Of a stretch of DNA of 64,000 nt, positions 4,060-63,273 are shown one piece after another. Position 1 is the stretch's first letter; each line of letters begins with the position of its first letter. Position numbers and translations under genes: made by a program. The stretch covers positions 1 through 64,000 of the IMG/VR virus record IMGVR_UViG_3300020202_000001. One strand, 5' to 3'. The notes under the pieces were generated by a model. That model saw only the letters and a program-made list of their open reading frames with translations. It was not told where the DNA came from and did not search any database.

Positions 4060-4077
4060 CTCAAAACCGGTTTTTGG
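4060..4077. repeat. dispersed palindromic motif copy 1
   Basis: CTCAAAACCGGTTTTTGG (reverse orientation of consensus). Confidence 0.85.
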
Positions 4078-4208
4078 GACTTTGCCGTAGACCCGATCGG
4101 GGGATGGTGGTTAAGATGGCCTCGCTCGAAGGAGTGTCACGGCACGGATGCCCCGCCCGCGTTGGGCGGTAAACAAGGACTTCTCTTGACCGTACCAGGC
4201 CCGCAATC

Positions 4209-4448
4209 ATGTTCTCAGTGGCCGCGAAAGTTCGGCCCTACTGCCCGGACGAGCACATCACCGCTCGCCAGCTCCGGGGGTTAGGCTTCTACCTCTCCGA
4301 GATGATCCCGGACGAGGCCTTCGTGCGCCGGGTGGCCGTGGGGTTGAACGACGACGAGGAGCTGGACGACGGCTCCTCGACCCTCGGCCTCCGGGTGGAC
4401 GAGCCGTTCGCAGTCGCGAGTGAGCTGGAGCTGGCAGCCGTGGCATAA
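4209..4448 (+). CDS. hypothetical protein
   Basis: ORF with plausible composition. Confidence 0.5.
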   Translation: MFSVAAKVRPYCPDEHITARQLRGLGFYLSEMIPDEAFVRRVAVGLNDDEELDDGSSTLGLRVDEPFAVASELELAAVA

Positions 4449-4477
4449 TGCCCTCGACGTGCAAAGGAGTGCACACC

Positions 4478-4888
4478 ATGAACCGCATCGGCTTCCTCTT
4501 CCGTTCCCTGCTCGCCCTGGTCGTCTCCCTGTTCCGCGTCTCGCGACGGCGGTACCGGGCCGCCCGCGCGAGCTGGTTCCCCCGCCAGCGGCCCGCGAAC
4601 GCCTACGCCAAGCCGCTCCAGACCTGTAAGGACATCGCCCGGATCACGGCGACGGCGATGCGGCAGAACCGCAGCGCCAACATCGTCGTCGACGCCGGCG
4701 GGTACGTGTACGAGTCGGACGTGACCATCCCGCAGGGGAAGGGTTACATGCCGCTCGAAGGCGTGCTCGTCGACGACTCGGCCTACTACGTCGGGGCCAA
4801 GTTCGACGTGCGGCACGACGGCCGCAAGAGCGTGGTCAACCTGGGCCGGTCTCGGCCCGCCACGCTGAAGACGCTCACCGCCGCCTGA
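4478..4888 (+). CDS. hypothetical protein
   Basis: ATG 4478 after the AAGGAG hairpin; high GC3. Confidence 0.6.
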   Translation: MNRIGFLFRSLLALVVSLFRVSRRRYRAARASWFPRQRPANAYAKPLQTCKDIARITATAMRQNRSANIVVDAGGYVYESDVTIPQGKGYMPLEGVLVDDSAYYVGAKFDVRHDGRKSVVNLGRSRPATLKTLTAA

Positions 4889-4971
4889 AGACGCGGCCGG
4901 CTGACACACAGAGACCAGCGGGGACGGCCGTCGCGCGTGCGGCGGCCGTCTTCGCGTCACGAGGAGACGCC

Positions 4972-5202: not shown

Positions 5203-5211
5203 GCCGTTTCC

Positions 5212-6309: not shown

Positions 6310-6312
6310 CCC

Positions 6313-7200
6313 GTGACGACGCTGCCCGTCATCGGCGTGATGCTGACGCAGCCGTCCCGCGAGGGCCTGGCGGTGCGGGCGATCACTGACTTCGTCAACC
6401 AGACGGTCCCCCGCAAGTCGCTGTACGTCTACACGACGGACCACGACTACGCGATCCGCCTGATGAACCGGTTCATGCCGCAGCTCGGCACCGTGTTCGT
6501 CGTCGCGGCCCGCCCGGGCTCGACCCCGCAGGACATGCTGCGGGCCGGGCTCTCGCAGGCCCGGGAGACGATGGGGTACGTCGCCCTCTGGGACGACGAC
6601 ATCCGCCACCACCCGGGCCGGCTGGAGCGGCAGACCGTCCAGACGGACGACGCGAACCGCCCCAGCCTGCTCAGCTCCGGCGTCTGGCACTTCTTCGACA
6701 GCGACGAGCTGTTCGTGTACCGCCTCGACAAGCGGCACGAGCCGCTGAAGGTGCGGCTGGTCGGCTCCACGCTCGTCTGCCGGGCCGAGCGGGTGACGGA
6801 CGACCTGATCCCGGTGAAGTACACTGGCAGCCCGACGCACGCCCTCGGCATGTCGGTCGTGCAGCGGTACGACGCCGTGCGGCCCACGGACGAGTGGTGG
6901 TGGATGGTGTTCGGCGTCCGCGGCGACAACGCGGGCGGTTACGAGTTTCACAGGAAGTGGGCCACGAACAAGGACCGGTGCCCTAGCGCCGCGTGGCTCC
7001 GAGAGAACCAGGTACTCCTGCGGCACTGGCTCGGTCAGTACGCGTGGGACGTTCCCAGGCTGGACGTCTGTGGCCAGGACGGCGTGGCGTTCCAGTTCGA
7101 GCCGCCCACGCTGTGGGGTCCAGAGGTGCCGCCGGTCGGCGAGCCCGAGGGCTTCGAGCGCGTGCGGGAAGTGCTGCAAGAGGAAACCAACAATGGCTAA
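6313..7200 (+). CDS. glycosyltransferase-like (GT-A/GT2) protein
   Basis: Segments AITDFVNQT and YVALWDDDIRHHPGRLERQ are typical of GT2. Confidence 0.55.
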   Translation: MTTLPVIGVMLTQPSREGLAVRAITDFVNQTVPRKSLYVYTTDHDYAIRLMNRFMPQLGTVFVVAARPGSTPQDMLRAGLSQARETMGYVALWDDDIRHHPGRLERQTVQTDDANRPSLLSSGVWHFFDSDELFVYRLDKRHEPLKVRLVGSTLVCRAERVTDDLIPVKYTGSPTHALGMSVVQRYDAVRPTDEWWWMVFGVRGDNAGGYEFHRKWATNKDRCPSAAWLRENQVLLRHWLGQYAWDVPRLDVCGQDGVAFQFEPPTLWGPEVPPVGEPEGFERVREVLQEETNNG

Positions 7201-7480
7201 GAAGACCAACGCCCTCGACCCCGAGACGACGCCGAACCACCCGGAGCTGACGCTGCGGGAGGTGCAGATCGCCATCGGGATCGCCGAGGGCAAGACCTAC
7301 CCCGAGATCGGCGACGCGCTGGGCCTCGGGTACGAGACCGTCCGGTCGTACGTCAACCGGCTCCGCGAGAAGACCTGCAGGCGGCGGAAGGCCGAGCTGG
7401 CCATCTGGGCGTCGCAGGAGCGGAGCTGGCTCGAACACCAACAGACCGACCTCACCGCGAAGGGCCAGACCGATGTTTGA
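7193..7480 (+). CDS. LuxR/GerE-family helix-turn-helix regulator (stand-alone)
   Basis: LTLREVQI...AEGKTYPEIGDALGLGYETVRSYVNRLREK. Confidence 0.85.
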   Translation: MAKKTNALDPETTPNHPELTLREVQIAIGIAEGKTYPEIGDALGLGYETVRSYVNRLREKTCRRRKAELAIWASQERSWLEHQQTDLTAKGQTDV

Positions 7481-8024: not shown

Positions 8025-8318
8025 GTGGTCGACGAGATCATCGACGTCGAGTTCGTGCAGGCCGGACCGGTGATCGTCCACGCTCACCGGTCCGCCCTCG
8101 TCTGCATCACGATCGAGAGCCCCAAACCGCCGACCAAGCAGGAGCTGATCGCCAAGGTCCTGTACAATGCCGGGTACGACCCGGTCGCCTTCGCGGCCAA
8201 CCCCGCGGGCCAGATGATGATCCAGGAGTGCGTCGCCGGCCGGATGAACCGCGACGGGCTCCTGCACACGGCGAAGAACATCGCCGTGCTGGACCCGACG
8301 ATCATCCGGCGTCGCTGA
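8025..8318 (+). CDS. hypothetical protein
   Basis: Abuts the previous stop; high GC3. Confidence 0.55.
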   Translation: MVDEIIDVEFVQAGPVIVHAHRSALVCITIESPKPPTKQELIAKVLYNAGYDPVAFAANPAGQMMIQECVAGRMNRDGLLHTAKNIAVLDPTIIRRR

Positions 8319-8338
8319 TCCAAAAACCGGTTTTGAGA
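8317..8338. repeat. dispersed palindromic motif copy 2
   Basis: GATCCAAAAACCGGTTTTGAGA. Confidence 0.9.
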
Positions 8339-10690: not shown

Positions 10691-11241
10691 TCGAAGTGCT
10701 CGACGGCCCCGGCTACTGGGACAGGCAGGCGTACGCCCTCGGCAGGCTCAAGGCCGCCGAGGACGACACGCCGACGCCCTCCTACAGCATGTCCGGCCTC
10801 CTGTACGTCTCCGAGGCGTCGGGGCGGCCGTGGGCGTGCCTGTCCGTGCCGAACGCCCTGGTCCGTGGCATGTTCGACGCGCTGACCGAGCCGGGGATCG
10901 AGCTGCCGATGACGGACGGGAAGCTGAACGCGCACATCAGCGTCTTCCGGCCCGAAGAGATCGAGATGCTGGGCGGACCCGAGGCACTAAAAAACGACCG
11001 AGGGAAGCCCTTTCGGTACTCCCTCGGTCGTCTGGTCGAGTTGACCCCGGCGGCTTGGGCCGACATGGCCAAGTGCTGGGTGCTTAGGGTTCATTCGCCC
11101 GAGCTGCAACAGCTGCGTCGAAGCCATGGGCTCTCGGGGCTGCCGAAGGACGGCGAGTACGACTTCCACATCACGGTGGCTGTCAGGCGGAAGGGCGTAC
11201 TCGGTCGCAACGACACCGCCAAGGCTACGGACGCGGCTTAG
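10687..11241 (+). CDS. 2H phosphoesterase superfamily protein
   Basis: Two Hx[S/T]x motifs, HISV and HITV, ~78 aa apart. Confidence 0.75.
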   Translation: MIEVLDGPGYWDRQAYALGRLKAAEDDTPTPSYSMSGLLYVSEASGRPWACLSVPNALVRGMFDALTEPGIELPMTDGKLNAHISVFRPEEIEMLGGPEALKNDRGKPFRYSLGRLVELTPAAWADMAKCWVLRVHSPELQQLRRSHGLSGLPKDGEYDFHITVAVRRKGVLGRNDTAKATDAA

Positions 11242-11729
11242 CAGGCCAGGCTAGGGGCGAAAGGGGACGGGGCCGCCTGACGGTTCTCGCGGCGGATCGC
11301 CTCGTACACTTCCTTACGGTGGACCGGGACGTCGGCCGGGGCCACGAACCCGAGCCGGACCTTGTCGCCGCGGATGTCGACGACCGTGTACTCGCAGGCC
11401 GTGGGTACCTTGTACCCCTCGCCCCTGCCGGCCGCGACCGCGTCGGCGAACTTCTGCAGCTCCGCGGGCTCCACCAGCACGATCGACTCGTCCCGCTGGC
11501 GGGAGAGGACGAGGTTGCCCCCGCCCTTGCGCTCGCGGACCGGCGGCGGCTGGTTGCCCCGGGCGATGTCCTGTAGGATCTGGACGTAGAGTTCCTTGCG
11601 GTAGACCTGGTACTGCTCCGGGGCCTTGATGCCGGTACGGACCTTGTCGCCGCGGATGTCAACGACGGTGACCTCGACGTCATCGCCGATGAGCGTGGAC
11701 TCGTCTCGTTGACGGGAGAGAACGAGCAT
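11238..11729 (-). CDS. csrA: tandem two-domain carbon storage regulator CsrA/RsmA
   Basis: Two repeats of LVLSRQRDES...TVVDIRGDKVR.G..AP....V.RKE.Y; the only well-supported minus-strand gene. Confidence 0.92.
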   Translation of the reverse strand: MLVLSRQRDESTLIGDDVEVTVVDIRGDKVRTGIKAPEQYQVYRKELYVQILQDIARGNQPPPVRERKGGGNLVLSRQRDESIVLVEPAELQKFADAVAAGRGEGYKVPTACEYTVVDIRGDKVRLGFVAPADVPVHRKEVYEAIRRENRQAAPSPFAPSLAC

Positions 11730-11765: not shown

Positions 11766-11794
11766 TTGACTTCCTGACAGCCGGTAAAGATACT
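11766..11794 (+). promoter_or_regulatory. putative sigma70-type promoter
   Basis: TTGACT-17 bp-GATACT. Confidence 0.5.
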
Positions 11795-11838
11795 ACCCCC
11801 GAACGGGGGACGACACAAGCAACACTGGACACATTGCC

Positions 11839-13542
11839 ATGGATGGCACGACGACCGCGCAAATCTGTCTTCCGCGGGTGGAGCTGCCCCCGAGCGGACT
11901 GAACAACGCCCGCTTGGCCTTGTCGAAGCTGGGTGAGGCCCGAGCCCTCGCCGAAGAGGTGGCTTCCGCGGCTGCCGCCACGGACGTAAAACCCACCCTC
12001 GCTCAGCGTAAAGCCGGTAACTACAAGAAGGGGAAGGTCGCCATCCATGGCCTTGTGGTCTCCGTCGAAAACCCTCGGGGCTCATACCGCGAGGGGACCG
12101 CACCGGACGGAAGCAAGTGGCGTACCAAGATGGAGCACCACTACGGCGCGATCACGGGTACGACAGGACGTGACGGCGACGCGGTCGACGTGTTCGTCGG
12201 CCCCGACCCCGACTGCGAGCTGGTGTTCGTGGTCAACCAGAACGACCCGGCGACCGGCCGGTTCGACGAGCACAAGGTCATGCTCGGGTTCACGACCGAG
12301 GCCGACGCGCGGGCCGGGTACCTGGCCTGCTACGAGAAGGGGTGGAAGGGGCTCGGCTCGATCAAGCCGATGACCCTCGACGATTTCAAAAACCGGTTTT
12401 TGAAAGGCGACCTCACCAAGAGGGCCAAGGAAGGCGACCATGCCCGTAGCGAAGATGCCGCCGCAGAAGGTGAACCTGACCGGGAAGATCCTGCGGGGGA
12501 AGGACGGCCGCCGGCGGCAGATGGTCAGCGGCCAGCTCGTGATGCTCGACGGCCCGACGACGCCGGCGAGCAGGGCGGCGACTCCATCCTCGCCGGCCTC
12601 CCCGACGCCGCCGACCGGGAACCACCTGCTGTCGCCGCCGATGGTGATCGCGGACGCGGACGGCCTGGCGAAGGCGGCGAGCCGGGGGCTGAAGGTGGGC
12701 GTGCTGCGGTACCCGGACGGGTCGCTGGCGGTGGTGCACGGCCTGTCGGGGAAGAACCTGCTGACGGACCGCGGCCGGATCGACATGATGGTGACGCAGG
12801 CGGGCCACGACCCGAAGCGGCTGGTGAAGTTCGGGGAGATGAAGGCGGCGGACGTGATCCGCTACCGGCGGGAGAACGCGAAGCTCGCGAACCAGCCGAG
12901 CGGGCGGATGAAGGAGGCGGACGCGGACGCTGGACCGATCTACTCGCTGGTCTCGTCGGGCCTGCTGACGAGCGAGGAGGCGATGGCGATCCTGGGGACG
13001 ATCACGACGCCGACGCCGCAGACGCCGCACGGCCGGCTCCGGGCGATGGGCTTCAAGGACGAGCTGATCGAGACGATCGTGCGGGACAGCCCGGCGTCGC
13101 CGACGATGCTGGCGTCGCCGGCGGCGGCCCCGCCGATGATCCCCAAGCCGGCCAAGGAGAGGAAGCGGCGGATCGACCAGCTCCCCGACCCAAGACCGTA
13201 GCCGTCGACCTCGACGGCACGCTCGCCGAGGAGTACGAGACGTTCGACCCGAAGGTGATCGGCGAGCCGATGCCCGACGTCGTCGCCTGGCTCCGCAAGT
13301 TCAAGGCGACCGGGGCCGTCGTCATCATCTGGACCGTCCGCGGCGACGACGCCCTGGTCAAGGCCTGGGCCGACAAGCACCAGATCCCGTACGACTACAT
13401 CAACGAGAACCCGCACCAGCCGCCGGACAGCAGCGGCAAGCTCGTCGCCGACGTCTACCTCGACAACCGGGCGATCCGGGCGGAGGGGACGTGGGACGAG
13501 TTCGCGCCGGCGGTGCTGGAGCAACTTCAGGAGGCCGCATGA
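11839..13542 (+). CDS. inorganic-pyrophosphatase-like (polyvalent-protein InPase) domain + disordered linker + HAD phosphatase domain; start uncertain
   Basis: AGNYKKG..ENPRGS..YG.I.GT.G.DGDAVDVF..FDEHKVMLGF; C-terminal AVDLDGTLA and DVYLDNRA. Confidence 0.7.
   Translation: MDGTTTAQICLPRVELPPSGLNNARLALSKLGEARALAEEVASAAAATDVKPTLAQRKAGNYKKGKVAIHGLVVSVENPRGSYREGTAPDGSKWRTKMEHHYGAITGTTGRDGDAVDVFVGPDPDCELVFVVNQNDPATGRFDEHKVMLGFTTEADARAGYLACYEKGWKGLGSIKPMTLDDFKNRFLKGDLTKRAKEGDHARSEDAAAEGEPDREDPAGEGRPPAADGQRPARDARRPDDAGEQGGDSILAGLPDAADREPPAVAADGDRGRGRPGEGGEPGAEGGRAAVPGRVAGGGARPVGEEPADGPRPDRHDGDAGGPRPEAAGEVRGDEGGGRDPLPAGEREAREPAERADEGGGRGRWTDLLAGLVGPADERGGDGDPGDDHDADAADAARPAPGDGLQGRADRDDRAGQPGVADDAGVAGGGPADDPQAGQGEEAADRPAPRPKTVAVDLDGTLAEEYETFDPKVIGEPMPDVVAWLRKFKATGAVVIIWTVRGDDALVKAWADKHQIPYDYINENPHQPPDSSGKLVADVYLDNRAIRAEGTWDEFAPAVLEQLQEAA
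12384..12405. repeat. dispersed palindromic motif copy 3 (intragenic, perfect 22-bp palindrome)
   Basis: TTTCAAAAACCGGTTTTTGAAA. Confidence 0.9.
12440..13201 (+). CDS. hypothetical protein nested in another frame within the InPase-HAD ORF
   Basis: Own GCC-AAGGAA-GGC hairpin/RBS; this frame has the genome-typical GC3 and normal amino-acid composition. Confidence 0.65.
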   Translation: MPVAKMPPQKVNLTGKILRGKDGRRRQMVSGQLVMLDGPTTPASRAATPSSPASPTPPTGNHLLSPPMVIADADGLAKAASRGLKVGVLRYPDGSLAVVHGLSGKNLLTDRGRIDMMVTQAGHDPKRLVKFGEMKAADVIRYRRENAKLANQPSGRMKEADADAGPIYSLVSSGLLTSEEAMAILGTITTPTPQTPHGRLRAMGFKDELIETIVRDSPASPTMLASPAAAPPMIPKPAKERKRRIDQLPDPRP

Positions 13543-17826: not shown

Positions 17827-17864
17827 GGACGCCCCGGGCCACGCTCGGGGCGTCCTGCTTTATT
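17827..17864 (+). terminator. intrinsic terminator
   Basis: GGACGCCCCG/CGGGGCGTCC stem + TGCTTTATT. Confidence 0.7.
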
Positions 17865-19467: not shown

Positions 19468-19489
19468 TTCTAAAAACCGGTTTTGAGAA
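19468..19489. repeat. dispersed palindromic motif copy 4
   Basis: TTCTAAAAACCGGTTTTGAGAA. Confidence 0.9.
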
Positions 19490-24600: not shown

Positions 24601-26152
24601 CGAGGACTACTGGCTCCAGTTCATGCAGGGGTTCTCGCCCCGCAAGCCGAAGGTCCCGCTCGTGTACGAGAAGTTCGTCAACGAGCTGAAGGGGGCCGGG
24701 ATCAACGTCGTCCGCGAGGGCAGCCAGCTCCACGTCATGGCGCTGACGGACAAGGACGTCGACCACCTGGCCGGCGACCGCGAGATCGAGGTCGGCGACA
24801 CGGTCGACTTCTACAACGAGCTGAAGCCCGTGAAGGGCGGCCTGTTCGACAAGACGAAGACCGGCGGCCACCACGGCAACCGGTGGGCGGCGATCAAGCT
24901 CGCGGAGCCGATGCCGAACCCGGTCATGGAGGAGCCGATCCGCCGCGTGCTCGGGCTGACGCAGAAGCGGTTCGAGGACGTGATCGCCGGCCGCGAGCCG
25001 CTGAACCCGCAGACCGGGGCGACCGGCCCGCGGGCGATCGCCGAGGCCCTGAAGACGATGAACGTCGACCGGGAGATCGCGATCGCCCGGGCGAAGATCC
25101 AGAACGGCACGAAGGCCGAGCGGGACATGGCCGTGCGGAAGCTCGGCTACCTCAAGAGCGCGAAGAAGACGGGCGTCCTGCCGGGCGACTGGGTGCTGAA
25201 CCGCGCCCCGGTCCTGCCGCCGCAGTTCCGCCCCGTGAACGTGATGGGCGGGAAGAACGTACCGCTCGTCGCGGACGCGAACTTCCTCTACAAGGAGCTG
25301 TTCGAGGCGAACAAGAACCTCCGCGACATGAGCGAGCAGGTGGGCGACGACGTCGGCGACGAGCGGCTGGCGGTGTACCACGCGTTCAAGGCGGTCACGG
25401 GCCTCGGCGAGCCGATCACGCAGAAGAGCCAGGAGAAACAGGTCAAGGGAATCCTAAAATCGGTTTTTGGATCTTCGCCGAAGTTCGGCACCGTGCAGCG
25501 GAAGCTGATCGGCTCCACGGTCGACAACGTCGGCCGGGGCGTCGTCGTCCCGAACCCGGACCTCGACATGGACAGCGTCGGGCTCCCGGAGGACCGGGCG
25601 TTCGACGTCTACAGCCGGTTCGTCGTCCGCCGCCTCCGCCGCTCGGGCATGCCGATGGCCCAGGCCCTGCGGCACGTCAAGGACAAGAGCCCGCTGGCCC
25701 GGAAAGTGCTGGTCGAGGAGATGGACCACCGGCCGGTGGTCGTCAACCGCGCCCCGGTGCTCCACCGGTTCGGCATCATGGCGTTCCGCCCCAAGCTCGT
25801 GAAGGGCTCGGTGCTGCACGTCCCGCCGCTGATCGTGAAGGGCTTCGGCATGGACTTCGACGGCGACGCGGTGCAGTACCACGTCCCGACGAGCGAGGAC
25901 GCCCGGGCCGAGGCCCTCGACCGGATGCTGCCCAGCCGGCAGCTGCTGAGCCCCGGCGACTTCAAAAGCCCCGTGCACGTCCCGGGGCAGGAGTACGTCG
26001 GCGGGCTGTACAAGGCGACGAGCGGCCGCAGCAAGCGGCCGGTCCGCTACTTCCGCAGCGCCAAGGACGTCCGCCACGCCTGGGAGCACGGTGAGGTCGC
26101 GATCGACGACGTCATCAAGGTCCTGGGCGACGCGGTCGCGGCGAAGCGGTAG
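21647..26152 (+). CDS. phage multisubunit-type RNA polymerase: beta fused to the N-terminal catalytic half of beta'
   Basis: beta motifs SHFGFMDPLRTPES, MPWGGQNFEDAI, GDKMSGRYGDKGVV, MKLHH; beta' motifs GGLFD, PVLPPQFRP, NRAPVLHR, catalytic GMDFDGD. Confidence 0.92.
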   Translation: MGRLGSGINIMGDSDLGIMDAMPGFVSAPMQLQAPKPVEEVEAEPEGLRAFGDVDATRKAIYDSVFEAASKMEPTKNQKHTLRLTGVQWQDPDKFTIRQRKEALLRGETLGRRLKGTWELLDNATNQVIDRREQTVLRVPHLTGGGTFVHNGSDYALGNQQRLRSGIFARVKDNGEYESHVNVLEGGPSHKIQLNPEKGVFYVNIGQANIPLLPLLQTLGASEKDLRAAWGDDLYARNYQKADGTAMAKIVAKFLKKPPVDGTSTADALRQTFENMRLDPEVTKRTLGQPYDRLGKDALVAATAKLLRVHRKEEEPDDRDHLAYQTFLGPEDLFAERLRKDRAGVRRNMLFKISGKGSLRAMGSSPLQDQIDSAIMSSGLGQALEEINPAEILDKNTKISRMGEGGIPSYDAVPDEARAVQPSHFGFMDPLRTPESFKAGVDVFLSGNVRKGRDGKLYGRFVDARTGKPAWKTPQEVADAVVTFPGADKLPYKRIPAMKNGRMGWATREEVGLVLPTMEHAFSPIDNLIPLKSQLKGQRASMASRMTTQALPLVGAEAPLVQSGLPGSKGERSYEEEYAKHMGAVVADRGGKVLAVTPDAMTVKYDDGKVDTIELYNNFPYNRKTGITQTPTVKPGQRFEAKQPIARSNFTDDKGAAALGLNARVAYMPWGGQNFEDAIVISEGMAKRMTSEHMYQNGLEVNDRTKVGRKEFISLFPSKYDKATLAKLDDKGLIKPGTQVHFGDPLILAAEERSTAQNKIHKKGTPAFNDVSVTWDHHDPGIVTDVVEGKNGPVVLVKSQHPMQVGDKMSGRYGDKGVVSAIIPDDQMPHDKDGKPFEVLLNDLGVISRTNPSQWAEAKLGAIAAKLGKAMKVEDFDPAVEDRAAWVEEQMRKHGIPDQEDVTDPVRGTKIPGISTGNRFFMKLHHTAESKGQGRGSGAYASDDTPAKGGETGSKRNSLLNVNALLSHGATDYLQDVGAISGQRNEDYWLQFMQGFSPRKPKVPLVYEKFVNELKGAGINVVREGSQLHVMALTDKDVDHLAGDREIEVGDTVDFYNELKPVKGGLFDKTKTGGHHGNRWAAIKLAEPMPNPVMEEPIRRVLGLTQKRFEDVIAGREPLNPQTGATGPRAIAEALKTMNVDREIAIARAKIQNGTKAERDMAVRKLGYLKSAKKTGVLPGDWVLNRAPVLPPQFRPVNVMGGKNVPLVADANFLYKELFEANKNLRDMSEQVGDDVGDERLAVYHAFKAVTGLGEPITQKSQEKQVKGILKSVFGSSPKFGTVQRKLIGSTVDNVGRGVVVPNPDLDMDSVGLPEDRAFDVYSRFVVRRLRRSGMPMAQALRHVKDKSPLARKVLVEEMDHRPVVVNRAPVLHRFGIMAFRPKLVKGSVLHVPPLIVKGFGMDFDGDAVQYHVPTSEDARAEALDRMLPSRQLLSPGDFKSPVHVPGQEYVGGLYKATSGRSKRPVRYFRSAKDVRHAWEHGEVAIDDVIKVLGDAVAAKR
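25451..25472. repeat. dispersed palindromic motif copy 5 (inside RNAP gene)
   Basis: ATCCTAAAATCGGTTTTTGGAT, within a run of rare codons gga atc cta aaa tcg gtt ttt gga tct. Confidence 0.8.
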
Positions 26153-28759: not shown

Positions 28760-28782
28760 GATCCAAAAACCGGTTTTGAGAA
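28760..28782. repeat. dispersed palindromic motif copy 6
   Basis: GATCCAAAAACCGGTTTTGAGAA. Confidence 0.9.
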
Positions 28783-37141: not shown

Positions 37142-37162
37142 TCCCAAAACCGGTTTTTGAAA
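37141..37162. repeat. dispersed palindromic motif copy 7
   Basis: ATCCCAAAACCGGTTTTTGAAA. Confidence 0.9.
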
Positions 37163-41360: not shown

Positions 41361-42854
41361 ATGGCAATGACGAAGATCATCGACCCGCGTGGCTGGGACT
41401 TCGACCGTCCCGTCGCGATGATGGTGAAGGTGTCGAGCCGGGGCCTGATCGGCTCCGACCGCCGCGACTTCATCAAGGTCGCCGGCCACCAGTTCCTCGA
41501 CGCGATCGACGGGCTGAAGGTCGCGAAGGATGAGGTGCCGATCCACCTCGTCGCCCTCGGCGCGTCCGAGTATTACGGCCCGAACCGCAACGGCGACGGG
41601 TTCAAGGCCGCCACCTGCAAGGAGCACCACAAGACGTTCGAGAAGTACGCCAAGTGGTTCCGCAACCACAAGAACAAGCTGTCGAACAACGACCCGTTCT
41701 ACGGGTACGTGAAGCAGTCGGCGTACAACGACGCGATGCACCGGGTCGAGCTGCTCGCGATGCTCAACGCCTCGAAGGAGGCGGCCGAGCGGAACGGCGG
41801 GTTCGTCGCCGACAAGGAGCTGGAGAAGCTCGCCAAGGACGAGGACATCCCCGTCTCGATGGCGTGCCGCGTCCCGTTCGACATCTGCAGCGGGTGCCAG
41901 AAGCAGGCCCGCACCCGGAACGAATACTGCACGAAGGGGACGTGCAAGTACGGCGGGTGCAAGGACAACCTCACGAAGATCGCCGAGGACGGGCACATCC
42001 TCCACGTCGACAACCCGAACCCGGTCTGGTTCGACATCAGCAACGTCTACCGCCCGGCCGACCGGATCGCGTACGGTGCCCGCGCCGACTGGCTGGCCAA
42101 GGCCGCGAGCCACCAGTTCACGCCCGGGGCCGAGATGGCCGAGATGCTCGGCGTCACCGCCCCGCTGGGCGTGTGCATCGGGCAGAACGACGCCGCCTAC
42201 TGGGGCGAGCACGTCGCCGGCCAGATCAAGCTGGCCCAGGCCCTCGCCGCGATCGAGCACGCCCCGCTCGCCGGCACCGGGCTCGACCCCCGGTGGTGCG
42301 ACGGCCGCGTCATGGGCAGCCTGAGCGACGCCCAGCTCGCGCTGATCGGCCCCGCCGGCAGCGAGAAGGCGGCCGCCGCCCTCGCCGCCCTGGCCGACCA
42401 CAAGATCATCCTGCCGCTGGCGGACTTCGCCCGGTGGCGGGGGAAGGCCGCCGCCGCCGACGCGGCCGCGGAGCTGCTGACGGGCGTCTTCGGCCGGCTG
42501 GCCGAGTCGGACGACCTGGGCGAGCGGCTGACCCACAACCTGTTCGAGGTCGGACACGCGAAGACGGCCTCCGTCGCAGTGCGGGGGCTGGCGAGCAACC
42601 TGGTGCCGGCGTTCTCCTTCGAGAAGGCCGCCGCCCAGGACCGGGCGATGCGGAGCGCGGTGCGTCACCGCGATGTGCCGGTTCTCAAAACCGGTTTTTG
42701 GAACGAGAAGCAGGCGGCGGATCACCCCGACGCTGCCTCCCTTGCCGACGAGTACGCGGTCTACAAGCTGGCCGCCCTCTACCGGATCGCCTCGAACGAC
42801 GGGGACTTCAATTTGACAGCGCGCCTTGCGGTCGGGCAGAATAGGGTCTGGTAA
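41361..42854 (+). CDS. prohead maturation protease (assemblin/HK97-type fold with Cys-rich insertion)
   Basis: GPNRNGDGF, FRNHKNK, VSMAC...DICSGC...C...C; just upstream of scaffold and capsid genes. Confidence 0.7.
   Translation: MAMTKIIDPRGWDFDRPVAMMVKVSSRGLIGSDRRDFIKVAGHQFLDAIDGLKVAKDEVPIHLVALGASEYYGPNRNGDGFKAATCKEHHKTFEKYAKWFRNHKNKLSNNDPFYGYVKQSAYNDAMHRVELLAMLNASKEAAERNGGFVADKELEKLAKDEDIPVSMACRVPFDICSGCQKQARTRNEYCTKGTCKYGGCKDNLTKIAEDGHILHVDNPNPVWFDISNVYRPADRIAYGARADWLAKAASHQFTPGAEMAEMLGVTAPLGVCIGQNDAAYWGEHVAGQIKLAQALAAIEHAPLAGTGLDPRWCDGRVMGSLSDAQLALIGPAGSEKAAAALAALADHKIILPLADFARWRGKAAAADAAAELLTGVFGRLAESDDLGERLTHNLFEVGHAKTASVAVRGLASNLVPAFSFEKAAAQDRAMRSAVRHRDVPVLKTGFWNEKQAADHPDAASLADEYAVYKLAALYRIASNDGDFNLTARLAVGQNRVW
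42682..42703. repeat. dispersed palindromic motif copy 8 (inside protease gene)
   Basis: TTCTCAAAACCGGTTTTTGGAA. Confidence 0.9.
42813..42842 (+). promoter_or_regulatory. internal sigma70-type promoter upstream of scaffold/capsid genes
   Basis: TTGACA-18 bp-CAGAAT. Confidence 0.55.
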
Positions 42855-47514: not shown

Positions 47515-47548
47515 AGCGGCTCACCCTCGGGTGGGCCGCTTCTGTTTT
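47515..47548 (+). terminator. intrinsic terminator
   Basis: AGCGGCTCACC/GGTGGGCCGCT stem + TCTGTTTT. Confidence 0.7.
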
Positions 47549-47575
47549 GTCCCCCGATCGGGTATCGTCCCGGGC

Positions 47576-47761
47576 ATGGCCGAGCAGATCCAAAAGCCGG
47601 TTTTGAGATTCGGGGTCCGCCGCCGGATGGTGTTCCTGCGGCGGCAGAAGCGGGCGGGCCTGATCTACTGCCCGCCGCCGCCGAAGAGCCTGGAGGAGGC
47701 GCTGGCCCGGGCCGGGATCTCATCGCAGGAGCTGGCGGCCGAACTGGAGGCCGCACGATGA
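47576..47761 (+). CDS. small hypothetical protein
   Basis: MAEQIQKPVLRF..., coupled to the next gene. Confidence 0.45.
   Translation: MAEQIQKPVLRFGVRRRMVFLRRQKRAGLIYCPPPPKSLEEALARAGISSQELAAELEAAR
47587..47609. repeat. dispersed palindromic motif copy 9
   Basis: GATCCAAAAGCCGGTTTTGAGAT. Confidence 0.85.
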
Positions 47762-49050: not shown

Positions 49051-49950
49051 ATGAGCAAGCTGATCGCGCGAGACAAGCGGGTCGAGATGGCGGCGAAGTA
49101 CGTGTCGTCGTTCGGGGACGACCCGACGCCCTGGTACCGGCGGATGTACTGGCGGTGGCGGTTCCGCCTCGAAGAGTGGGGCCTCCGCGAGCTGAAGCGT
49201 GACGCGCGGGTGATCGGGCAGATGGTCCAGCACCCGCGGGCGTTCAGGAAGTTCGTCGGGTTCGTCCGGCCCTGGCTGAAGGCGTGGCGGGCCAGCGGGT
49301 TCGACCCGAAGTGGCTGGAGGGCTACGGCTCGACGCCGAACCGGGTCCGGCGGTACCTGCTGGAGGCCTGGTCGATCGCCCGGCACGGCAAGCGGCACAT
49401 GCGGATCTACCTGCCCGTGATCTCAAACACGTTCGACGCCCCGTGCGAGGGCTGCGGGCGGTGCTGCCGGGTGCCCAAGGGCGAGAGCGGGTACGTCCAG
49501 GTGCAGGTCTTCCCGTGGGAGCGGTTCCGCTTCGTGCACCCGGACATCGCCGTGGTCCACCCGGAGCGGCCGAACGAGTACATGTTCCGGTTCGTGGACG
49601 ACGGCGAGGGCGGGAAGAAGTGCCCGATGCTCGCGGCGGACGGCCGGTGCTCGGCGTACGGGTACCGCCCGACCGCCTGCGTGGTGTTCAACTGCGCGGA
49701 CGGGATGAGCGAGTTCTCCGAGGGGATGTTCTCGGCGGGCCAGTTCCTTCGGAACGTGCCGAAGGTCAAAGAGCGGCTCGTGCAGATCGGTTTCAAGAAG
49801 GTGGAACGGTACGAGGTCGAGGACGGCCTCCGCCGGCGACGAAGGGACAGCCAATGGCCAAACTCAATACCGGTTTTTGGATCGACGACGCGGGCATCAT
49901 GCGAGGGGTCGGCCGCGAAACCCCGCCGGACCGCATCGTCCACGTCATGA
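49051..49950 (+). CDS. YkgJ-like CxxCxxCC cysteine-cluster protein
   Basis: CEGCGRCC...CPML...CSAY..RP.AC..F.C. Confidence 0.7.
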   Translation: MSKLIARDKRVEMAAKYVSSFGDDPTPWYRRMYWRWRFRLEEWGLRELKRDARVIGQMVQHPRAFRKFVGFVRPWLKAWRASGFDPKWLEGYGSTPNRVRRYLLEAWSIARHGKRHMRIYLPVISNTFDAPCEGCGRCCRVPKGESGYVQVQVFPWERFRFVHPDIAVVHPERPNEYMFRFVDDGEGGKKCPMLAADGRCSAYGYRPTACVVFNCADGMSEFSEGMFSAGQFLRNVPKVKERLVQIGFKKVERYEVEDGLRRRRRDSQWPNSIPVFGSTTRASCEGSAAKPRRTASSTS

Positions 49951-53673: not shown

Positions 53674-54002
53674 CGGTCGTCGTCGACAACTGGGTCGGCG
53701 TCGCCGACAAGCGCCCCACGAGCCCGGCCGTGCCCCCGCAGGTGTGTGAGTACCTGCGGTTCACGGGCTCGTGGGGACAGCTCCGGTGGTTGAAGATCTC
53801 GCGGTGCCTGGGTAACAATCTCGGCGTCCTCGTGTTCCCGCACGGCGACTTCGAGCTGCGGTACCCGTCGCTGGAGTACACGATCGCGTACGAGAGCGCG
53901 TGGAACGAGATCATCTACCGGGTCGGCCGCCGCTCGCAGCGGCAGCACGCGTTCTTCGCGAGCCGGGAGGTCGGCCGACGTAAGCGACGCACCGGGTTCT
54001 AA
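53670..54002 (+). CDS. hypothetical protein
   Basis: ATGA overlap with the upstream gene. Confidence 0.5.
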   Translation: MTVVVDNWVGVADKRPTSPAVPPQVCEYLRFTGSWGQLRWLKISRCLGNNLGVLVFPHGDFELRYPSLEYTIAYESAWNEIIYRVGRRSQRQHAFFASREVGRRKRRTGF

Positions 54003-54018
54003 AAACCGGTTTTTGAAT
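53997..54018. repeat. dispersed palindromic motif copy 11
   Basis: TTCTAAAAACCGGTTTTTGAAT. Confidence 0.9.
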
Positions 54019-59858: not shown

Positions 59859-59969
59859 TCGGTCGAGTGAGTGAGGCCTTTCCCCCGGGGGCAACGTCGC
59901 CCCCGGGGGTCTTGCAAGGAAGCAAGGAAGCTGCCCCCGGCCCGGGGGCTCGGTTAAGGAGAACCGACC

Positions 59970-60431
59970 ATGCCCGATCTTTTCCAGCGCGTCGCATCCA
60001 ACCTGGGTGGCGTGTTCACGGCCGACAAGGCGAAGCTGAACATGGGGGCGGACATGTCCGTCCTCATCCAGCAGATGAACGCGTCCTACCAGCAGAACAT
60101 CACTCGGCTCTACGAGGTCGGCGGCGACCGGAGCTACTACATCGGCGGCCGTACGCAGGGGCAGCTCCAGCTGAACCGCGTCGTGGGGCCGACCGCCACG
60201 ATCAAGGCGTTCTACAAGAAGTTCGGGGACGTCTGCCAGGCCCGCAACAACAACATCGAGCTGGAGCTGACCGAGACGGACTGCTCCGGTGCCGGCGGCG
60301 TCGGCGGCGGCTCGATCAAGTACCTCTGCAAGTTCTGCGTGCTGCAGCAGGTGACGATCGGCGTCCAGGCGCAGGACATGGTCATCAACGAGTCCAGCTC
60401 GATGATCTTCATGTCGATGGAAGTGACCTGA
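59970..60431 (+). CDS. tail tube protein
   Basis: Follows the sheath; 153 aa; QNITRLYEVG motif. Confidence 0.7.
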   Translation: MPDLFQRVASNLGGVFTADKAKLNMGADMSVLIQQMNASYQQNITRLYEVGGDRSYYIGGRTQGQLQLNRVVGPTATIKAFYKKFGDVCQARNNNIELELTETDCSGAGGVGGGSIKYLCKFCVLQQVTIGVQAQDMVINESSSMIFMSMEVT

Positions 60432-60546
60432 TCCCGGCCGTCCCGACGACGGCGGGAGAGACTCTACCGGGGCGGCCCCTTCCCACCACGGGCGGGGGCC
60501 GCCCCCAGGGCCTTTGAGCCCGAACATCGCACCTTCAAGGTGAGCA

Positions 60547-63252
60547 ATGCCCCCAGACGCCACGAACGGCACCGGGGCTGGACAGACGCGGCGGGACCGA
60601 CGTACCGAAGACCTGGTCACCGACGCGCACAGCCACGGGGTCCTGAACAAGTCGCTCCGCCAGCTCACGGCCGACCCCCACCGCGGGGCCGGGCAGGAGC
60701 AGTCGGGGCACCAAGCCCGCCCGACCACGCACACCGGCGTGGTCGTCTACTCCGTCCCGTACTGCAACTGGTACCGCGTCCAGCTCGACGGCCTCGGCGG
60801 CACGATCGCGTGCACGGCCGGCGGCGAGTCCGCGTACGTCCCGGTCGGCCCCCGGGCCACCGGCGTGATCCCGCCCTACAGCCAGGTCGTCGTCCAGCTG
60901 ATCCCCGGCCGCAAGCACGGCGTCATCCTCGCCGCCTACCCGCTCACGCAGCACGACGGCACGATGGCCTGCCCCGACTGGATCAGCCAGGGCGGCCAGA
61001 GCGGGCTGCTGCGAGAGGACGCGTACAAGCAGCCGTTCCAGCTCTACCGCGAGGGCGGGATCGACGCGTTCGGGTCCAACCGCCCGGTCGACTCGACCAC
61101 GATGGACTGGGGCCGGATCACCGAGACCGGCGTCGGCATCCACGTCGACGCGTACATGACGTTCCTGCGGGTCAGCGAGATCTGCGGGATCTTCGCCAAC
61201 TACTGGGACGACCACCTGCGGGTCGCCGGCTGGAACATGGACCTGCAGACGGCGGCCCACGAGGTCGTCGTCCGGTCCGACGAGGGCGAGCTGCGGTACG
61301 TCGAGCGGCACAGTACCTACCCGCACGAGGCGCTCGGCCAGTACAAGGACGGGACCGACTACACGACCGAGAACGGCGACGCCGACGTCCAGTTCGAGAA
61401 GCCCGTGGGCAAGCTCGACCTGAAGGACGGCGAGCACGACGTGCAGAGCGTGGCCCGCTACGAGGAGTACGGCGGGTACCTCGGGCAGGGCCGCAAGCGG
61501 GTCGTGAACATCCCGGCCAAGGAGAGCGGCAAGCGGCTGTACAAGGACGACCCGACCTCCGAGCCCGACATGGGCGTGTGGGAGGAGAACGTCGGCCTCG
61601 ACGGCACCTACTCGATGCGGTCGGCCCGCGCGTACTTCAACGTCAAGTACCCGGTGATCCCGGTCGCCAAGGAGATGCGGCTCCCCGAGGACCAGCAGAC
61701 CGGCGACGACGCCCGCAAGGGGAACTACAAGTTCAGCGGCAAGCACGGCGGCGGCGACCCGCACAAGATCAAGGACGTGAAGATCGAGGGCGAGCAGAAG
61801 CACCTGCTGACCGTCGCCGGCGTCATGGACCTGATCGCCCACGCCTTCAACTGGCAGGGGCTCCACCCGTTCCACTACCACAAGGAGGACTACAAGGTCC
61901 CGCAGGAGAAGGACGTCCAGAACAAGGCGGGAGCCCCCGACAAGGCCCAGGACTTCCTGAACTTCGGCTCGCTCGCGAACCAGATGTACATGGACTACCC
62001 GACGCCGCGGACCGTGAAGGTCGACGAGCGGTACGGGGACGTCAAATACTTCGCCCGCGTCGCCTACCACGCGATGCTGCCGGACGGCGGCCAGGTGTGG
62101 GGCGACGGGTACGGGGCCGAGATCACGATGACCGGCGGCCGCATCCGCCTGTCCGCCCCGGGCGGCATCGACGTCACGCCGGGCACGGACTTCAACGTCC
62201 TCGCCGGCCGCGACATCAACCTCCGCGCCCTCGAATCGTTCGACGCCTCGGCCGGCAAGAAGGACCTCCGGCTCAAGGGCCAGATGAACGTCCAGATCGT
62301 CAGCAACAAGGCCGGCATCCTGCTGGAGAGCAAGGCCCCGACGTTCCTGGCCGAGTTCCGCGACAAGGTCGGCGAGGAGGTCGTCAGCGGCGGGATCGTC
62401 CTGAAGGCGAAGGACTCGGCCGTCGTCGCGTACGGCGGCGACGTGTACCTCCGCACGGGCGGGTCCAACCTGCGGGCCGGGCAGATCGTGCTCGACGCCA
62501 GCAAGGGCCGCGACACGGTGGCGATCAAGGGCACCACGGTCAACCACTACGCCCGGTCGAGCGTGAACCACTTCGTCGGCCCCGAGGGCGACAGCAGCAC
62601 GGTGCGGGCCGCCTACTCGTTCAGCGAGAGCGGGGCCATCATCGACAAGCAGGTGTCGATCGGCGGGCAGCTCGGCGTGCTCGGCGGGGCCGTGTTCGAC
62701 GGCGGCATCGTCAACCGCGACGGGTACGGGTCGGTCAACAACAACCCGTTCGTCGGCGACATCCCGGGCAGCGTGATCTCCGAGGCCGCCGGCGCGATCC
62801 GCCAGGCGATCGAGGGGCTGAAGAAGGCCGGCAAGGAGTCCCACAAGGCGATGTTCCCGGACTGGCTCTACAAGGAGAAGCAGCCCGGGAACGACGACAC
62901 GATCAAGGACCTGGAGTTCTCGTTCCGCGACAAGGAGGGCGGCCAGCAGTACCACGCGACCCAGTTCAAGTTCACCGAGAGCCGCTGGCAGATGATGGCC
63001 CGGCTCGGCGGCGGGTCCGGCGGCAAGGAGTGGGACGAGCCCAAGGTGACGTACCAGGGCCGCGAGCAGCTCCCGTACCCCGGCAAGCAGAAGTGGGAGG
63101 ACGAGCCGACCCTCCTGCAGCTCGACTCGTGGACGATGTTCGACGCGGCCAAGGGGCACGCGAAGGACCGCCCCGGGCCGTACGAGGACCCGAAGCTCGG
63201 CACCCTGACCCCCGTTCCGCCGAAGACCGGCTTCAAGGTCATCGGCGGCTGA
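60547..63252 (+). CDS. baseplate hub/spike-like (gp5/VgrG-like) protein
   Basis: N-terminal OB-like segment, C-terminal beta-strand repeats, tail module position. Confidence 0.45.
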   Translation: MPPDATNGTGAGQTRRDRRTEDLVTDAHSHGVLNKSLRQLTADPHRGAGQEQSGHQARPTTHTGVVVYSVPYCNWYRVQLDGLGGTIACTAGGESAYVPVGPRATGVIPPYSQVVVQLIPGRKHGVILAAYPLTQHDGTMACPDWISQGGQSGLLREDAYKQPFQLYREGGIDAFGSNRPVDSTTMDWGRITETGVGIHVDAYMTFLRVSEICGIFANYWDDHLRVAGWNMDLQTAAHEVVVRSDEGELRYVERHSTYPHEALGQYKDGTDYTTENGDADVQFEKPVGKLDLKDGEHDVQSVARYEEYGGYLGQGRKRVVNIPAKESGKRLYKDDPTSEPDMGVWEENVGLDGTYSMRSARAYFNVKYPVIPVAKEMRLPEDQQTGDDARKGNYKFSGKHGGGDPHKIKDVKIEGEQKHLLTVAGVMDLIAHAFNWQGLHPFHYHKEDYKVPQEKDVQNKAGAPDKAQDFLNFGSLANQMYMDYPTPRTVKVDERYGDVKYFARVAYHAMLPDGGQVWGDGYGAEITMTGGRIRLSAPGGIDVTPGTDFNVLAGRDINLRALESFDASAGKKDLRLKGQMNVQIVSNKAGILLESKAPTFLAEFRDKVGEEVVSGGIVLKAKDSAVVAYGGDVYLRTGGSNLRAGQIVLDASKGRDTVAIKGTTVNHYARSSVNHFVGPEGDSSTVRAAYSFSESGAIIDKQVSIGGQLGVLGGAVFDGGIVNRDGYGSVNNNPFVGDIPGSVISEAAGAIRQAIEGLKKAGKESHKAMFPDWLYKEKQPGNDDTIKDLEFSFRDKEGGQQYHATQFKFTESRWQMMARLGGGSGGKEWDEPKVTYQGREQLPYPGKQKWEDEPTLLQLDSWTMFDAAKGHAKDRPGPYEDPKLGTLTPVPPKTGFKVIGG

Positions 63253-63273
63253 TCCAAAAACCGGTTTTGAGAA
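63251..63273. repeat. dispersed palindromic motif copy 12
   Basis: GATCCAAAAACCGGTTTTGAGAA. Confidence 0.9.

What the first reader, a model, noticed from the sequence alone, without database searches (positions are those of the whole stretch)
4060..63273. Regularly dispersed 22-bp AT-rich pseudo-palindrome (ATCCAAAAACCGGTTTTGAGA) written even into coding sequence
Seen: 12 copies at ~4060, 8317, 12384, 19468, 25451, 28760, 37141, 42682, 47587, 49861, 53997 and 63251. They occur in both orientations, 2.3-9.3 kb apart (mean ~5.4 kb), and never cluster. Five are intragenic (InPase, RNAP, protease and two small ORFs) in different reading frames, and they coincide with codons rare in this GC3-rich genome (e.g. 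gga atc cta aaa tcg gtt ttt gga tct in the RNAP gene). This points to selection on the DNA rather than the protein. Several others directly abut stop codons. The core is an A-tract-CCGG-T-tract, which would favour intrinsic bending. Inference: binding sites for a dimeric protein acting across the genome irrespective of transcription units (parS/matS-like organisation, segregation, packaging/ejection or protection signal), not a classical operator. The binding protein is unidentified; candidates here are the LuxR HTH and the ORFs at 14018 and 37191.
Basis: partly seen in the sequence, partly recalled or inferred. Interest (0 to 1): 0.88.

Follow-up and report, generated by a model that had tools for sequence, protein, structure and literature searches.

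The report
Dispersed palindromic protein-binding sites in jumbo phage
A 224-kb uncultured phage carries about one copy every 5 kb of a 21-24 bp palindrome, kept by selection even inside essential genes, which most likely marks genome-wide binding sites for a phage-encoded ParB/Noc-like DNA-binding protein; related phages have their own versions of the palindrome at the same gene boundaries.

Summary
All 12 copies are at the stated coordinates, against 0 expected by chance. They occur in both orientations and are spaced more evenly than random placement allows (CV 0.38, P about 0.001). The window is bases 1-64000 of a 224,418-bp IMG/VR phage contig (GC 69%) whose genes are almost all on one strand. 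Eleven more copies lie in the other parts of that contig I could read.

The element is selected at the DNA level. About a third of the A/T-ending codons in the 1,502-codon RNA polymerase gene (6 of 19 by the scored test, 7 by direct count) sit inside the copy at 25452.

The copies are not indifferent to genes. 18 of 23 lie in intergenic DNA, which is 7.7% of the window, typically arranged as stop codon, motif, ribosome-binding site, start codon.

Related phages lack this exact sequence but carry their own palindromes at the same gene boundaries.

The best candidate binder lies outside the window, at contig 180009-180899. It is a 297-aa protein with a ParB/Noc-like DNA-binding fold, an AT-hook-like motif and a coiled coil. 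Its gene is preceded by the local palindrome in about ten lineages.

The most likely function is a genome-wide operator or roadblock and organiser set, comparable to KorB or Noc. It is not a promoter, a terminator or an RNA element. No binding has been tested.

The parts
4059..4079 (-). Motif copy, reverse orientation, 2 mismatches. Intergenic, 8 nt after a canonical intrinsic terminator (4015-4051), with a sigma70-like element downstream.
8318..8338 (+). Motif copy, exact. Overlaps stop codon TGA of gene 8025-8318. The next start is 14 nt downstream.
12384..12405 (.). Perfect 22-bp palindromic variant written into the C-terminal end of the InPase gene (FKWWL in relatives, FKNRFL here). Lies 35 nt upstream of the start at 12440.
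19468..19488 (+). Motif copy, 2 mismatches. Intergenic, 25 nt upstream of gene 19514. The same position holds the local palindrome in L051, L049 and L073.
25452..25472 (-). Motif copy, 3 mismatches, inside the fused beta/beta'-N RNA polymerase gene. It is written with rare A/T-ending codons over the conserved peptide GILKSVFGS.
28761..28781 (+). Motif copy, exact. Intergenic, 35 nt upstream of the beta'-C RNA polymerase gene. Position shared with L072, L051 and L050.
37142..37162 (-). Motif copy, 3 mismatches. Abuts the stop at 37141 and lies 28 nt upstream of gene 37191. Family B has its own palindrome upstream of the orthologue.
42683..42703 (-). Motif copy, 1 mismatch, inside gene 41361-42854, 150 nt before its stop. 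A sigma70-like promoter lies 110 nt downstream (42813-42842).
47588..47608 (+). Motif copy, 1 mismatch. In the 295-bp gap after gene 47091-47462, 45 nt after a strong terminator (47513-47542).
49862..49882 (-). Motif copy, 2 mismatches, inside gene 49051-49950, 68 nt before its stop. Rare codons.
53998..54018 (-). Motif copy, 2 mismatches. Contains the stop codon at 54000-54002. It is followed by a terminator-like hairpin and a -10-like TATAGT before gene 54151.
63252..63272 (+). Motif copy, exact. Overlaps stop codon TGA of the 901-aa gene 60547-63252. The next start is 17 nt downstream.
7193..7480 (+). LuxR/GerE-type HTH protein (95 aa). This is the only in-window alternative candidate for the binder.
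   Evidence: (GerE E = 2e-7)

Best explanation
The copies are high-affinity binding sites for a dimer of a phage-encoded sequence-specific DNA-binding protein. There are about 40 per genome, with consensus close to GATCYAAAAACCGGTTTTRRGATC.

The most likely protein is the 297-aa product of contig 180009-180899, outside the window. It has a ParB/Noc-type helix-turn-helix domain, an invariant AT-hook-like RSGGRKP motif, a long C-terminal coiled coil and a Lys/Ala-rich tail. It has no ParB N-terminal CTPase domain.

Inferred mechanism:
- Each HTH reads an outer TCY/RGA arm.
- The AT-hook-like segment lies in the minor groove of the A/T tracts.
- The coiled coil makes the dimer.

Bound at gene boundaries about every 5 kb along a one-directional gene array, the protein would act as a genome-wide operator or roadblock set, including control of its own gene. 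It might also act as an organiser or bridging factor for the phage chromosome. This is comparable to KorB/OB on plasmid RK2 or Noc/NBS in Bacillus.

Shown here: the sites, their dyad symmetry, the selection on DNA, their placement, their co-evolving counterparts in relatives, and the fold and conserved site-gene linkage of the candidate.

Inferred only: that this protein binds the sites, and what binding does.
For: - Enrichment and symmetry.
- Lineage-specific palindromes in relatives. Arms of the type CTAAAA...TTTTAG are kept across many lineages while the centre changes (CCGG, GTAC, CTAG, CNG, CG). More distant lineages use AGTGGAGACGTCTCCACT or GCAAAGATATCTTTGC.
- The same gene boundaries are occupied across lineages: upstream of the orthologues of genes 17918, 19514, beta'-C, 33852 and 37191, and of ThyX.
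- DNA-level selection. The RNAP copy uses 6-7 of the gene's 19 A/T-ending codons, while L072 encodes the same peptide with only G/C-ending codons. A family-B sublineage created its palindrome in the RNAP gene with ATA, TCT and TTG codons plus two residue changes. The InPase C-terminus is altered.
- No orientation preference on a one-strand gene array.
- Regular spacing.
- Candidate protein. Pfam HTH_ParB E = 4e-4; DUF1016_N in 8 of 10 family members. AF2 model pLDDT 80. The top 29 Foldseek PDB hits are all ParB, Spo0J, Noc or SopB DNA-binding domains. Invariant RSGGRKP.
- Site-gene linkage. The candidate's gene is immediately preceded by the local palindrome in this phage, L193, L194, L195, L199, L237 (two copies), L238/L244, L243 and L242. 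In this phage and L193 the site sits just upstream of the -35 of a sigma70-like promoter.
Against: - No binding data exist.
- The fold match is remote. The best Foldseek E-value is 0.008, the Pfam hit is below the curated cut-off, and the sequence profile against PDB gives only E = 0.62 for Spo0J.
- Sites precede many genes (about 1 in 6-7), so a site before the candidate's gene is not unique. ThyX shows the same in four lineages.
- No palindrome was seen upstream of the homologue in L196 or L197.
- No homologue was recovered from the contigs of families A and B, whose palindromes lack A-tracts. The search patterns used were narrow.
- L195 keeps the CCGG motif at only 31% protein identity, so protein-site covariation could not be shown.
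- The consistent left/right asymmetry of the 21-mer (ATCC... versus ...GAGA) is not what a simple homodimer predicts.
- Regular spacing is not explained by an ordinary operator role.
Confidence: 0.5

Rival explanations
1. The motif is the promoter for the phage's own multisubunit RNA polymerase, possibly with a dimeric specificity factor. Copies would be distributed along the genome like T7 promoters, some embedded in upstream genes.
For: - 15 of 23 copies end within 50 nt upstream of a start codon.
- Two copies directly follow canonical terminators, at 4059 and 47588.
- The phage encodes a fused beta/beta' RNA polymerase. In the relative Arash the RNAP and a sigma factor are virion proteins (PMC10585845).
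- The motif co-evolves by lineage, as T7-group promoters do.
- T7-type promoters also lie inside coding sequence.
Against: - The element is a palindrome, perfect in several lineages. It occurs in both orientations (about 11 forward, 9-10 reverse) upstream of genes that are all on one strand.
- Several copies leave 1-14 nt before the start codon, with the ribosome-binding site abutting or inside the motif (contig 85238, 107438, 185627). A start site would therefore have to lie inside the motif.
- Copy 53998 is followed by a terminator-like hairpin.
- Separate sigma70-like promoters exist at 11766, 33788, 42813 and L106:4727.
- Downstream genes mix nucleotide metabolism (ThyX) with virion genes, so the motif marks no single temporal class.
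Confidence: 0.17
2. The sites are purely architectural: loading, bridging or partition sites (parS, matS or N15-type dispersed centromeres), or packaging or self-marking signals. They would have no role in gene expression, and would sit between genes only because a fixed AT-rich 21-mer is costly inside GC-rich coding sequence.
For: - Spacing is regular, 2.3-9.3 kb, P about 0.001.
- Copies are forced into long genes at the cost of rare codons and residue changes.
- Function is orientation-independent.
- The candidate has a ParB/Noc fold.
- Half of the intergenic copies consist of little more than the motif inserted between a stop codon and the next ribosome-binding site.
Against: - The candidate lacks the ParB CTPase domain needed for clamp loading and sliding.
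- No ParA partner was seen in the parts read.
- The conserved placement at the -35 of the candidate's own promoter looks regulatory.
- Positions are tied to the same gene starts across lineages.
Confidence: 0.2
3. The motif acts at the RNA level, as an intercistronic processing site, translational operator or weak terminator in polycistronic mRNA.
For: - The typical arrangement is stop codon, motif, ribosome-binding site, start codon.
- A tandem CsrA-type RNA-binding regulator is encoded at 11238-11729.
- The family-A palindrome folds into a stable hairpin, -14.6 kcal/mol, z = -2.8.
Against: - The window's copies fold weakly (-4 to -8 kcal/mol), no better than shuffled sequence.
- There are no Rfam matches.
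- Symmetry runs through the centre of the site, which a hairpin loop does not need.
- Canonical GC-rich terminators with T-runs exist separately.
- The conserved core has no GGA motif for CsrA.
Confidence: 0.05
4. The copies are recognition sites for a serine-recombinase-like or nicking enzyme. The half-sites closely resemble the Gin/Hin gix/hix core.
For: The native gix core is CTGTAAACCGAGGTTTTGGA (PMC5175349). The window's reverse form, CTCAAAACCGGTTTTTGGA, differs mainly by lacking the central 2 bp.
Against: - The 2-bp crossover core that defines these sites is missing.
- About 40 recombination sites would scramble the genome.
- No Resolvase domain appeared among the roughly 90 proteins scanned.
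- Synteny with relatives is intact.
Confidence: 0.04

Closest known systems
KorB and its OB operators on IncP plasmid RK2 (from my own knowledge)
   Same: About a dozen copies of a short palindrome are dispersed over about 60 kb. Some lie next to promoters and some far away or inside genes. They are bound by a dimeric ParB-fold HTH protein that acts as a global regulator and controls its own operon.
   Different: KorB has the ParB N-terminal CTPase domain and a ParA partner (IncC). The candidate here has neither, at least in the parts read. OB sites are not evenly spaced. The setting here is a 224-kb phage, apparently lytic, rather than a plasmid.
Noc and its NBS sites in Bacillus subtilis (from my own knowledge; PDB 6y93 and 7ol9 are among the fold hits)
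   Same: Tens of dispersed palindromes with a CCGG-type centre mark a whole chromosome for a ParB-fold protein. The Noc DNA-binding domain gives the best target-normalised TM-score of the fold hits (6y93_A, 0.68).
   Different: Noc has a CTPase domain and a membrane-targeting helix, and it acts in nucleoid occlusion. NBS reads T-tract, CCCGGG, A-tract, whereas here the order is A-tract, CCGG, T-tract.
Stoperators of Cluster A mycobacteriophages (L5 gp71; from my own knowledge)
   Same: Twenty to thirty copies of a short site lie mostly in short intergenic gaps. They are bound by one phage protein that blocks elongation, and the sites and protein co-evolve by lineage.
   Different: Stoperators are asymmetric 13-mers oriented with transcription. 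They belong to temperate phages and are read by the immunity repressor.
Dispersed centromere repeats of the plasmid-prophage N15 bound by SopB (from my own knowledge)
   Same: Palindromic ParB-family sites are scattered through phage genes rather than clustered, and they have side effects on phage gene expression.
   Different: N15 has only four sites, belonging to a true partition system with SopA, in a temperate linear plasmid-prophage.
T7-group phage promoters
   Same: A highly conserved element of about 20 bp is specific to each lineage, recurs along the genome, and sometimes lies within coding sequence.
   Different: T7 promoters are asymmetric, all point with transcription, and are read by a single-subunit RNAP.

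Membership tests
ParB/parS partition system | ParB-type HTH DNA-binding domain in the binder | tested here: inconclusive
   The top 29 Foldseek hits are ParB, Spo0J, Noc or SopB DNA-binding domains, with probability near 1 for most, but the best E-value is 0.008. Pfam HTH_ParB scores 20.9 bits against a cut-off of 22.6. DUF1016_N matches 8 of 10 family members.
ParB/parS partition system | N-terminal ParB/Srx CTPase domain | tested here: not met
   No Pfam ParB N-terminal match. Residues 1-60 of the model are two helices, and the fold hits align only about 100-130 residues of the DNA-binding region.
ParB/parS partition system | Sites clustered near the par operon or origin, together with a ParA ATPase | tested here: not met
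   The sites are evenly dispersed at about 5.3 kb. No ParA appeared among the proteins scanned, but only about half of the contig could be read.
KorB/OB-type global operator set | Many dispersed palindromic operators, some beside promoters and some remote, with autoregulation | tested here: inconclusive
   The pattern of sites fits. Copies lie beside sigma70-like promoters at L106:4702, 4059, 19468, 47588 and 42683, and a site lies upstream of the candidate's gene in about ten lineages. Binding and repression were not tested.
Stoperators (Cluster A mycobacteriophages) | Asymmetric site whose orientation follows transcription | tested here: not met
   The sites are palindromic and occur in both orientations on a one-strand gene array.
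Phage RNAP promoter (T7-like logic) | Single orientation with transcription and room for a transcribed leader | tested here: not met
   About 11 forward against 9-10 reverse copies. The start codon is 1-14 nt from the motif end in several copies.
Intrinsic terminator | Stable GC-rich hairpin followed by a U-run | tested here: not met
   Hairpins are -4 to -8 kcal/mol with z-scores from -1 to +0.8. True terminators lie elsewhere, at 4015-4051, 17827-17855 and 47513-47542.
Serine invertase gix/hix site | Two half-sites around a 2-bp crossover core, with a cognate recombinase | tested here: not met
   The half-sites resemble gix but the central 2 bp are absent. No Resolvase domain was found in the proteins scanned.
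Known RNA family | Match to an Rfam model | tested here: not met
   No hits at gathering thresholds across the whole window.

The most novel reading that the evidence does not exclude
An uncultured clade of roughly 200-kb phages with virion-type multisubunit RNA polymerases may mark its whole chromosome with evenly spaced, lineage-specific palindromes. These would be read by a new CTPase-less ParB/Noc-fold protein carrying an AT-hook-like motif and a coiled coil.

On this reading the array is a physical organiser. It could loop or bridge the chromosome, mark it as self, or couple it to the phage transcription machinery. Selection for it would be strong enough to write sites into the RNA polymerase gene itself through rare codons and residue changes.
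Probability: 0.25. Interest if true: 0.8.

Novelty: new variant of a known kind. Interest (0 to 1): 0.62.

Why it matters
If the model holds, it gives a phage counterpart to the KorB, Noc and stoperator systems: one protein reading a co-evolving, evenly spaced site array across a jumbo phage genome.

- It would expose a layer of genome-wide control or organisation in a large clade that is almost entirely uncultured. More than 60 IMG/VR contigs were found here, and Salmonella phage Arash and three Vibrio phages are the only cultured relatives with near-full-length matches.
- It gives a directly testable protein-DNA pair.
- The sites are a clear natural example of DNA-level selection overriding codon usage and even protein sequence in an essential gene.
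- The even spacing raises a mechanistic question that ordinary operators do not answer.

Tried and rejected
- Exact-motif scans. In IMG/VR, the 19-mer occurs only in the window's own contig. In 185,579 genomes there are 9 unrelated singletons, so no host chromosome carries the array. In JGI metagenomes there are only the phage's own contig, unrelated singletons and an unrelated 22-bp satellite.
- A 14-mer scan of IMG/VR was swamped by chance hits.
- megablast of 20 kb against cultured phages gave no match.
- Restriction-site idea: ACCGGT and CCGG are not depleted or special (37 observed against 36 expected), so the centre is not a spared restriction site.
- Terminator and RNA-structure idea: rejected.
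- ORF at 14018: no Pfam or PHROG hit, and no counterpart in the related loci held here.
- ORF at 37191: conserved, but no DNA-binding signature.
- Arash sigma factor gp196: no homologue in the sequence held here.
- Pfam and PHROG annotation of about 90 proteins gave few functions.
- Strict inverted-repeat discovery missed imperfect palindromes, so about 40 of the 63 related loci remain unclassified.
- Searches for the candidate binder or its neighbour in family A and B contigs found nothing. The peptide patterns used were narrow.
- Literature searches found no description of such arrays in jumbo phages.
- A search for the hix half-site sequence, recalled from memory, returned only unrelated hits, so that sequence was not confirmed. 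The gix core was found.

Full report
**1. What the window is**

The window is positions 1-64000 of IMGVR_UViG_3300020202_000001 (Ga0196974_1000007), a 224,418-bp viral contig with about 69% GC.
- GC3 analysis puts nearly all genes on the + strand. The clear exception is a tandem CsrA gene at 11238-11729 on the - strand.
- Gene 21647-26152 is a fused RNA polymerase beta plus the N-terminal part of beta'. Gene 28817-31573 carries a beta' C-terminal domain.
- Only Salmonella phage Arash and three Vibrio phages among cultured phages match the beta/beta' protein over most of its length, at about 30% identity. In Arash the polymerase and a sigma factor are virion proteins (PMC10585845).
- IMG/VR holds 62 related loci with 40-72% identity in this protein.

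**2.

None was found in 100 shuffles. The copy at 12384 is a perfect 22-bp palindrome.
- Five copies are forward, six reverse and one symmetric.
- In other readable parts of the same contig I found 11 more copies: contig positions 85238, 92357, 107438, 112466, about 179897, 185627, 209765, 214578, 218058 and 223294, plus one in L135.
- Gaps range from 2.3 to 9.3 kb. CV is 0.38 in the window (P about 0.001 against random positions or random gene starts) and 0.34 over 16 gaps.

**3. Selection acts on the DNA**

- The RNA polymerase gene has only 19 A/T-ending codons among 1,502. By the codon test, six of the eight codons under copy 25452 are A/T-ending (P = 5e-11). One search lists seven of the 19 between 25450 and 25474.
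- The peptide there (GILKSVFGS) is conserved across the clade. The closest IMG/VR relative, L072, encodes it entirely with G/C-ending codons.
- Copies 42683 and 49862 show the same effect (P = 2e-4 and 8e-5). The four coding copies use three different reading frames.
- At 12384 the InPase C-terminus reads FKNRFL where relatives read FKWWL.
- In a family-B sublineage the local palindrome was created inside the polymerase gene. It uses ATA, TCT and TTG codons and two residue changes. It has been kept while flanking synonymous sites drifted.

**4. Placement is not indifferent to genes**

- Intergenic DNA is 7.7% of the window, yet 7-8 of 12 copies lie in it (P = 9e-6). Over all 23 copies, 18 are intergenic.
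- 15 of 23 copies end within 50 nt upstream of a start codon.
- 9 of the 18 intergenic copies abut or overlap the preceding stop codon. The common layout is therefore stop codon, motif, ribosome-binding site, start codon.
- Three of the five coding copies lie within 150 nt of the 3' end of their gene.
- The geometry relative to other signals varies.
  - Copies 4059 and 47588 follow canonical terminators.
  - Copy 53998 precedes a terminator-like hairpin and a -10-like element.
  - Copies 19468 and 47588 lie just downstream of sigma70-like elements.
  - Copies 4059, 42683 and L106:4702 lie just upstream of sigma70-like elements.

**5. Relatives carry their own versions**

The exact sequence is unique to this phage, but dispersed palindromes recur in relatives.
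- L072: same arms as here, with a GTAC centre.
- L193 (79% identity in the candidate protein): one base different, giving an odd-centred palindrome.
- L194: CTAG centre. L195, L049 and L050: CCGG types. L051: an A6-CG-T6 palindrome. L037: TTCATAAG-CA-CTTATGAA. L237, L238/L244 and L243: further variants.
- Family A (4 loci): AGTGGAGACGTCTCCACT. Family B (9 loci): GCAAAGATATCTTTGC, mostly inside genes.
- Sources.
- These sites occupy the same boundaries as in the window or in each other: upstream of the orthologues of genes 17918, 19514, beta'-C, 33852 and 37191, and of ThyX.
- About 40 related loci could not be classified with my simple detectors.

**6. What it is not**

- Not a terminator or structured RNA. 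The hairpins are weak and no better than shuffles, and Rfam gives nothing.
- Not a spared restriction site. ACCGGT occurs as often as expected.
- Unlikely to be a promoter in itself.
  - It is symmetric and occurs in both orientations on a one-strand gene array.
  - Several copies leave no room for a leader.
  - Separate sigma70-like promoters exist.
- Its half-sites resemble the Gin gix core (PMC5175349), but the 2-bp crossover core is missing and no recombinase was seen.

**7. A candidate binder**

One copy (L106:4702) lies 91 nt upstream of a 297-aa gene at contig 180009-180899, just upstream of the -35 of a sigma70-like promoter.
- The protein has a sub-threshold ParB-HTH match. Eight of ten family members match DUF1016_N.
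- An AF2 model (pLDDT 80) finds only ParB, Spo0J, Noc and SopB DNA-binding domains among its top 29 PDB matches. The E-values are weak.
- The alignment shows an invariant RSGGRKP segment that I read as AT-hook-like. It also shows a long C-terminal coiled coil and a basic tail, and no ParB CTPase domain.
- The family has no PHROG match.
- Homologues at 27-85% identity are preceded by the local palindrome in L193, L194, L195, L199, L237 (two copies), L238/L244, L243 and probably L242. None was seen in L196 or L197.
- This linkage is what an autoregulated DNA-binding protein would show, but it is not unique to this gene.
- The in-window LuxR/GerE HTH (7193-7480) remains an untested alternative.

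**8. Verdict**

It is a clade-wide system of evenly spaced, lineage-specific palindromes under strong DNA-level selection.

I take the copies to be binding sites of a phage-encoded dimeric protein, most likely the ParB/Noc-fold protein. They would act as a global operator or roadblock set, and possibly as an organiser, in the manner of KorB or Noc. My confidence is about 0.5 for this package and higher for 'protein-binding dyad sites' alone.

The even spacing and the consistent left/right asymmetry of the 21-mer remain unexplained.

Noticed in passing
window 1-64000 (whole): Many 6-bp palindromes are completely absent despite high expected counts: CTCGAG 0 of 47, GGGCCC 0 of 42, GAGCTC 0 of 35, GGCGCC 0 of 21, TGATCA 0 of 21, GGATCC 0 of 16, CACGTG 0 of 14. 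AGCGCT occurs once against 11 expected. This points to very strong avoidance of restriction sites.
   Followed up: partly
window 11238-11729, minus strand: A gene for two tandem CsrA domains (Pfam CsrA E = 3e-35, two stretches). It is the only clear minus-strand gene, and a sigma70-like promoter region lies between it and the InPase gene. Homologues occur in L050, L012 and L051.
   Followed up: partly
window 1060-1095, 11766-11810, 33788-33817; L106:4727-4757; weaker at 4088-4115 and 47543-47575: A second recurring signal. Sigma70-like -35/-10 hexamers carry an embedded or adjacent CCCCC-N3-4-GGGGG inverted repeat, and the arrangement is conserved in L193. It may be an operator for another regulator.
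   Followed up: partly
window 11839-13542: The InPase reading frame has no in-frame stop until 13542, although the coding signal switches to another frame at about 12420-12440. Possible causes are an assembly indel, a frameshift or an unusual gene end, and the switch sits exactly at the motif copy.
   Followed up: no
L072, L073/L056, L037, L051 (RNAP genes); L194:15128-17014 (ThyX): The polymerase genes of several relatives are interrupted by 0.7-2 kb insertions between conserved blocks. ThyX in L194 carries intein and HNH signatures. Both suggest inteins or homing elements in essential genes.
   Followed up: no
L216, L227, L211 (OMLO01124224.1, OMLO01011326.1, Ga0126337_10187736): Unrelated low-GC metagenome contigs hold tandem arrays (period about 22 bp) that contain the same 19-mer 14-36 times. 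This looks like a satellite with no link to the phage.
   Followed up: partly
window 342-1055 and 47758-49041; L008:7259-9268; L194:17047-19837: There are several glycosyltransferases (GT64-like, GT2, GT9-like), plus ThyX, both ribonucleotide reductase subunits and adenylosuccinate synthetase. A UDG-PolA fusion occurs in a relative. Together these hint at extensive nucleotide or DNA-modification metabolism.
   Followed up: no
window motif copies compared with the gix core: The reverse form of the motif matches the phage Mu Gin recombination core CTGTAAACCGAGGTTTTGGA closely, apart from the missing central 2 bp. This may be convergence on A-tract plus HTH recognition.
   Followed up: partly
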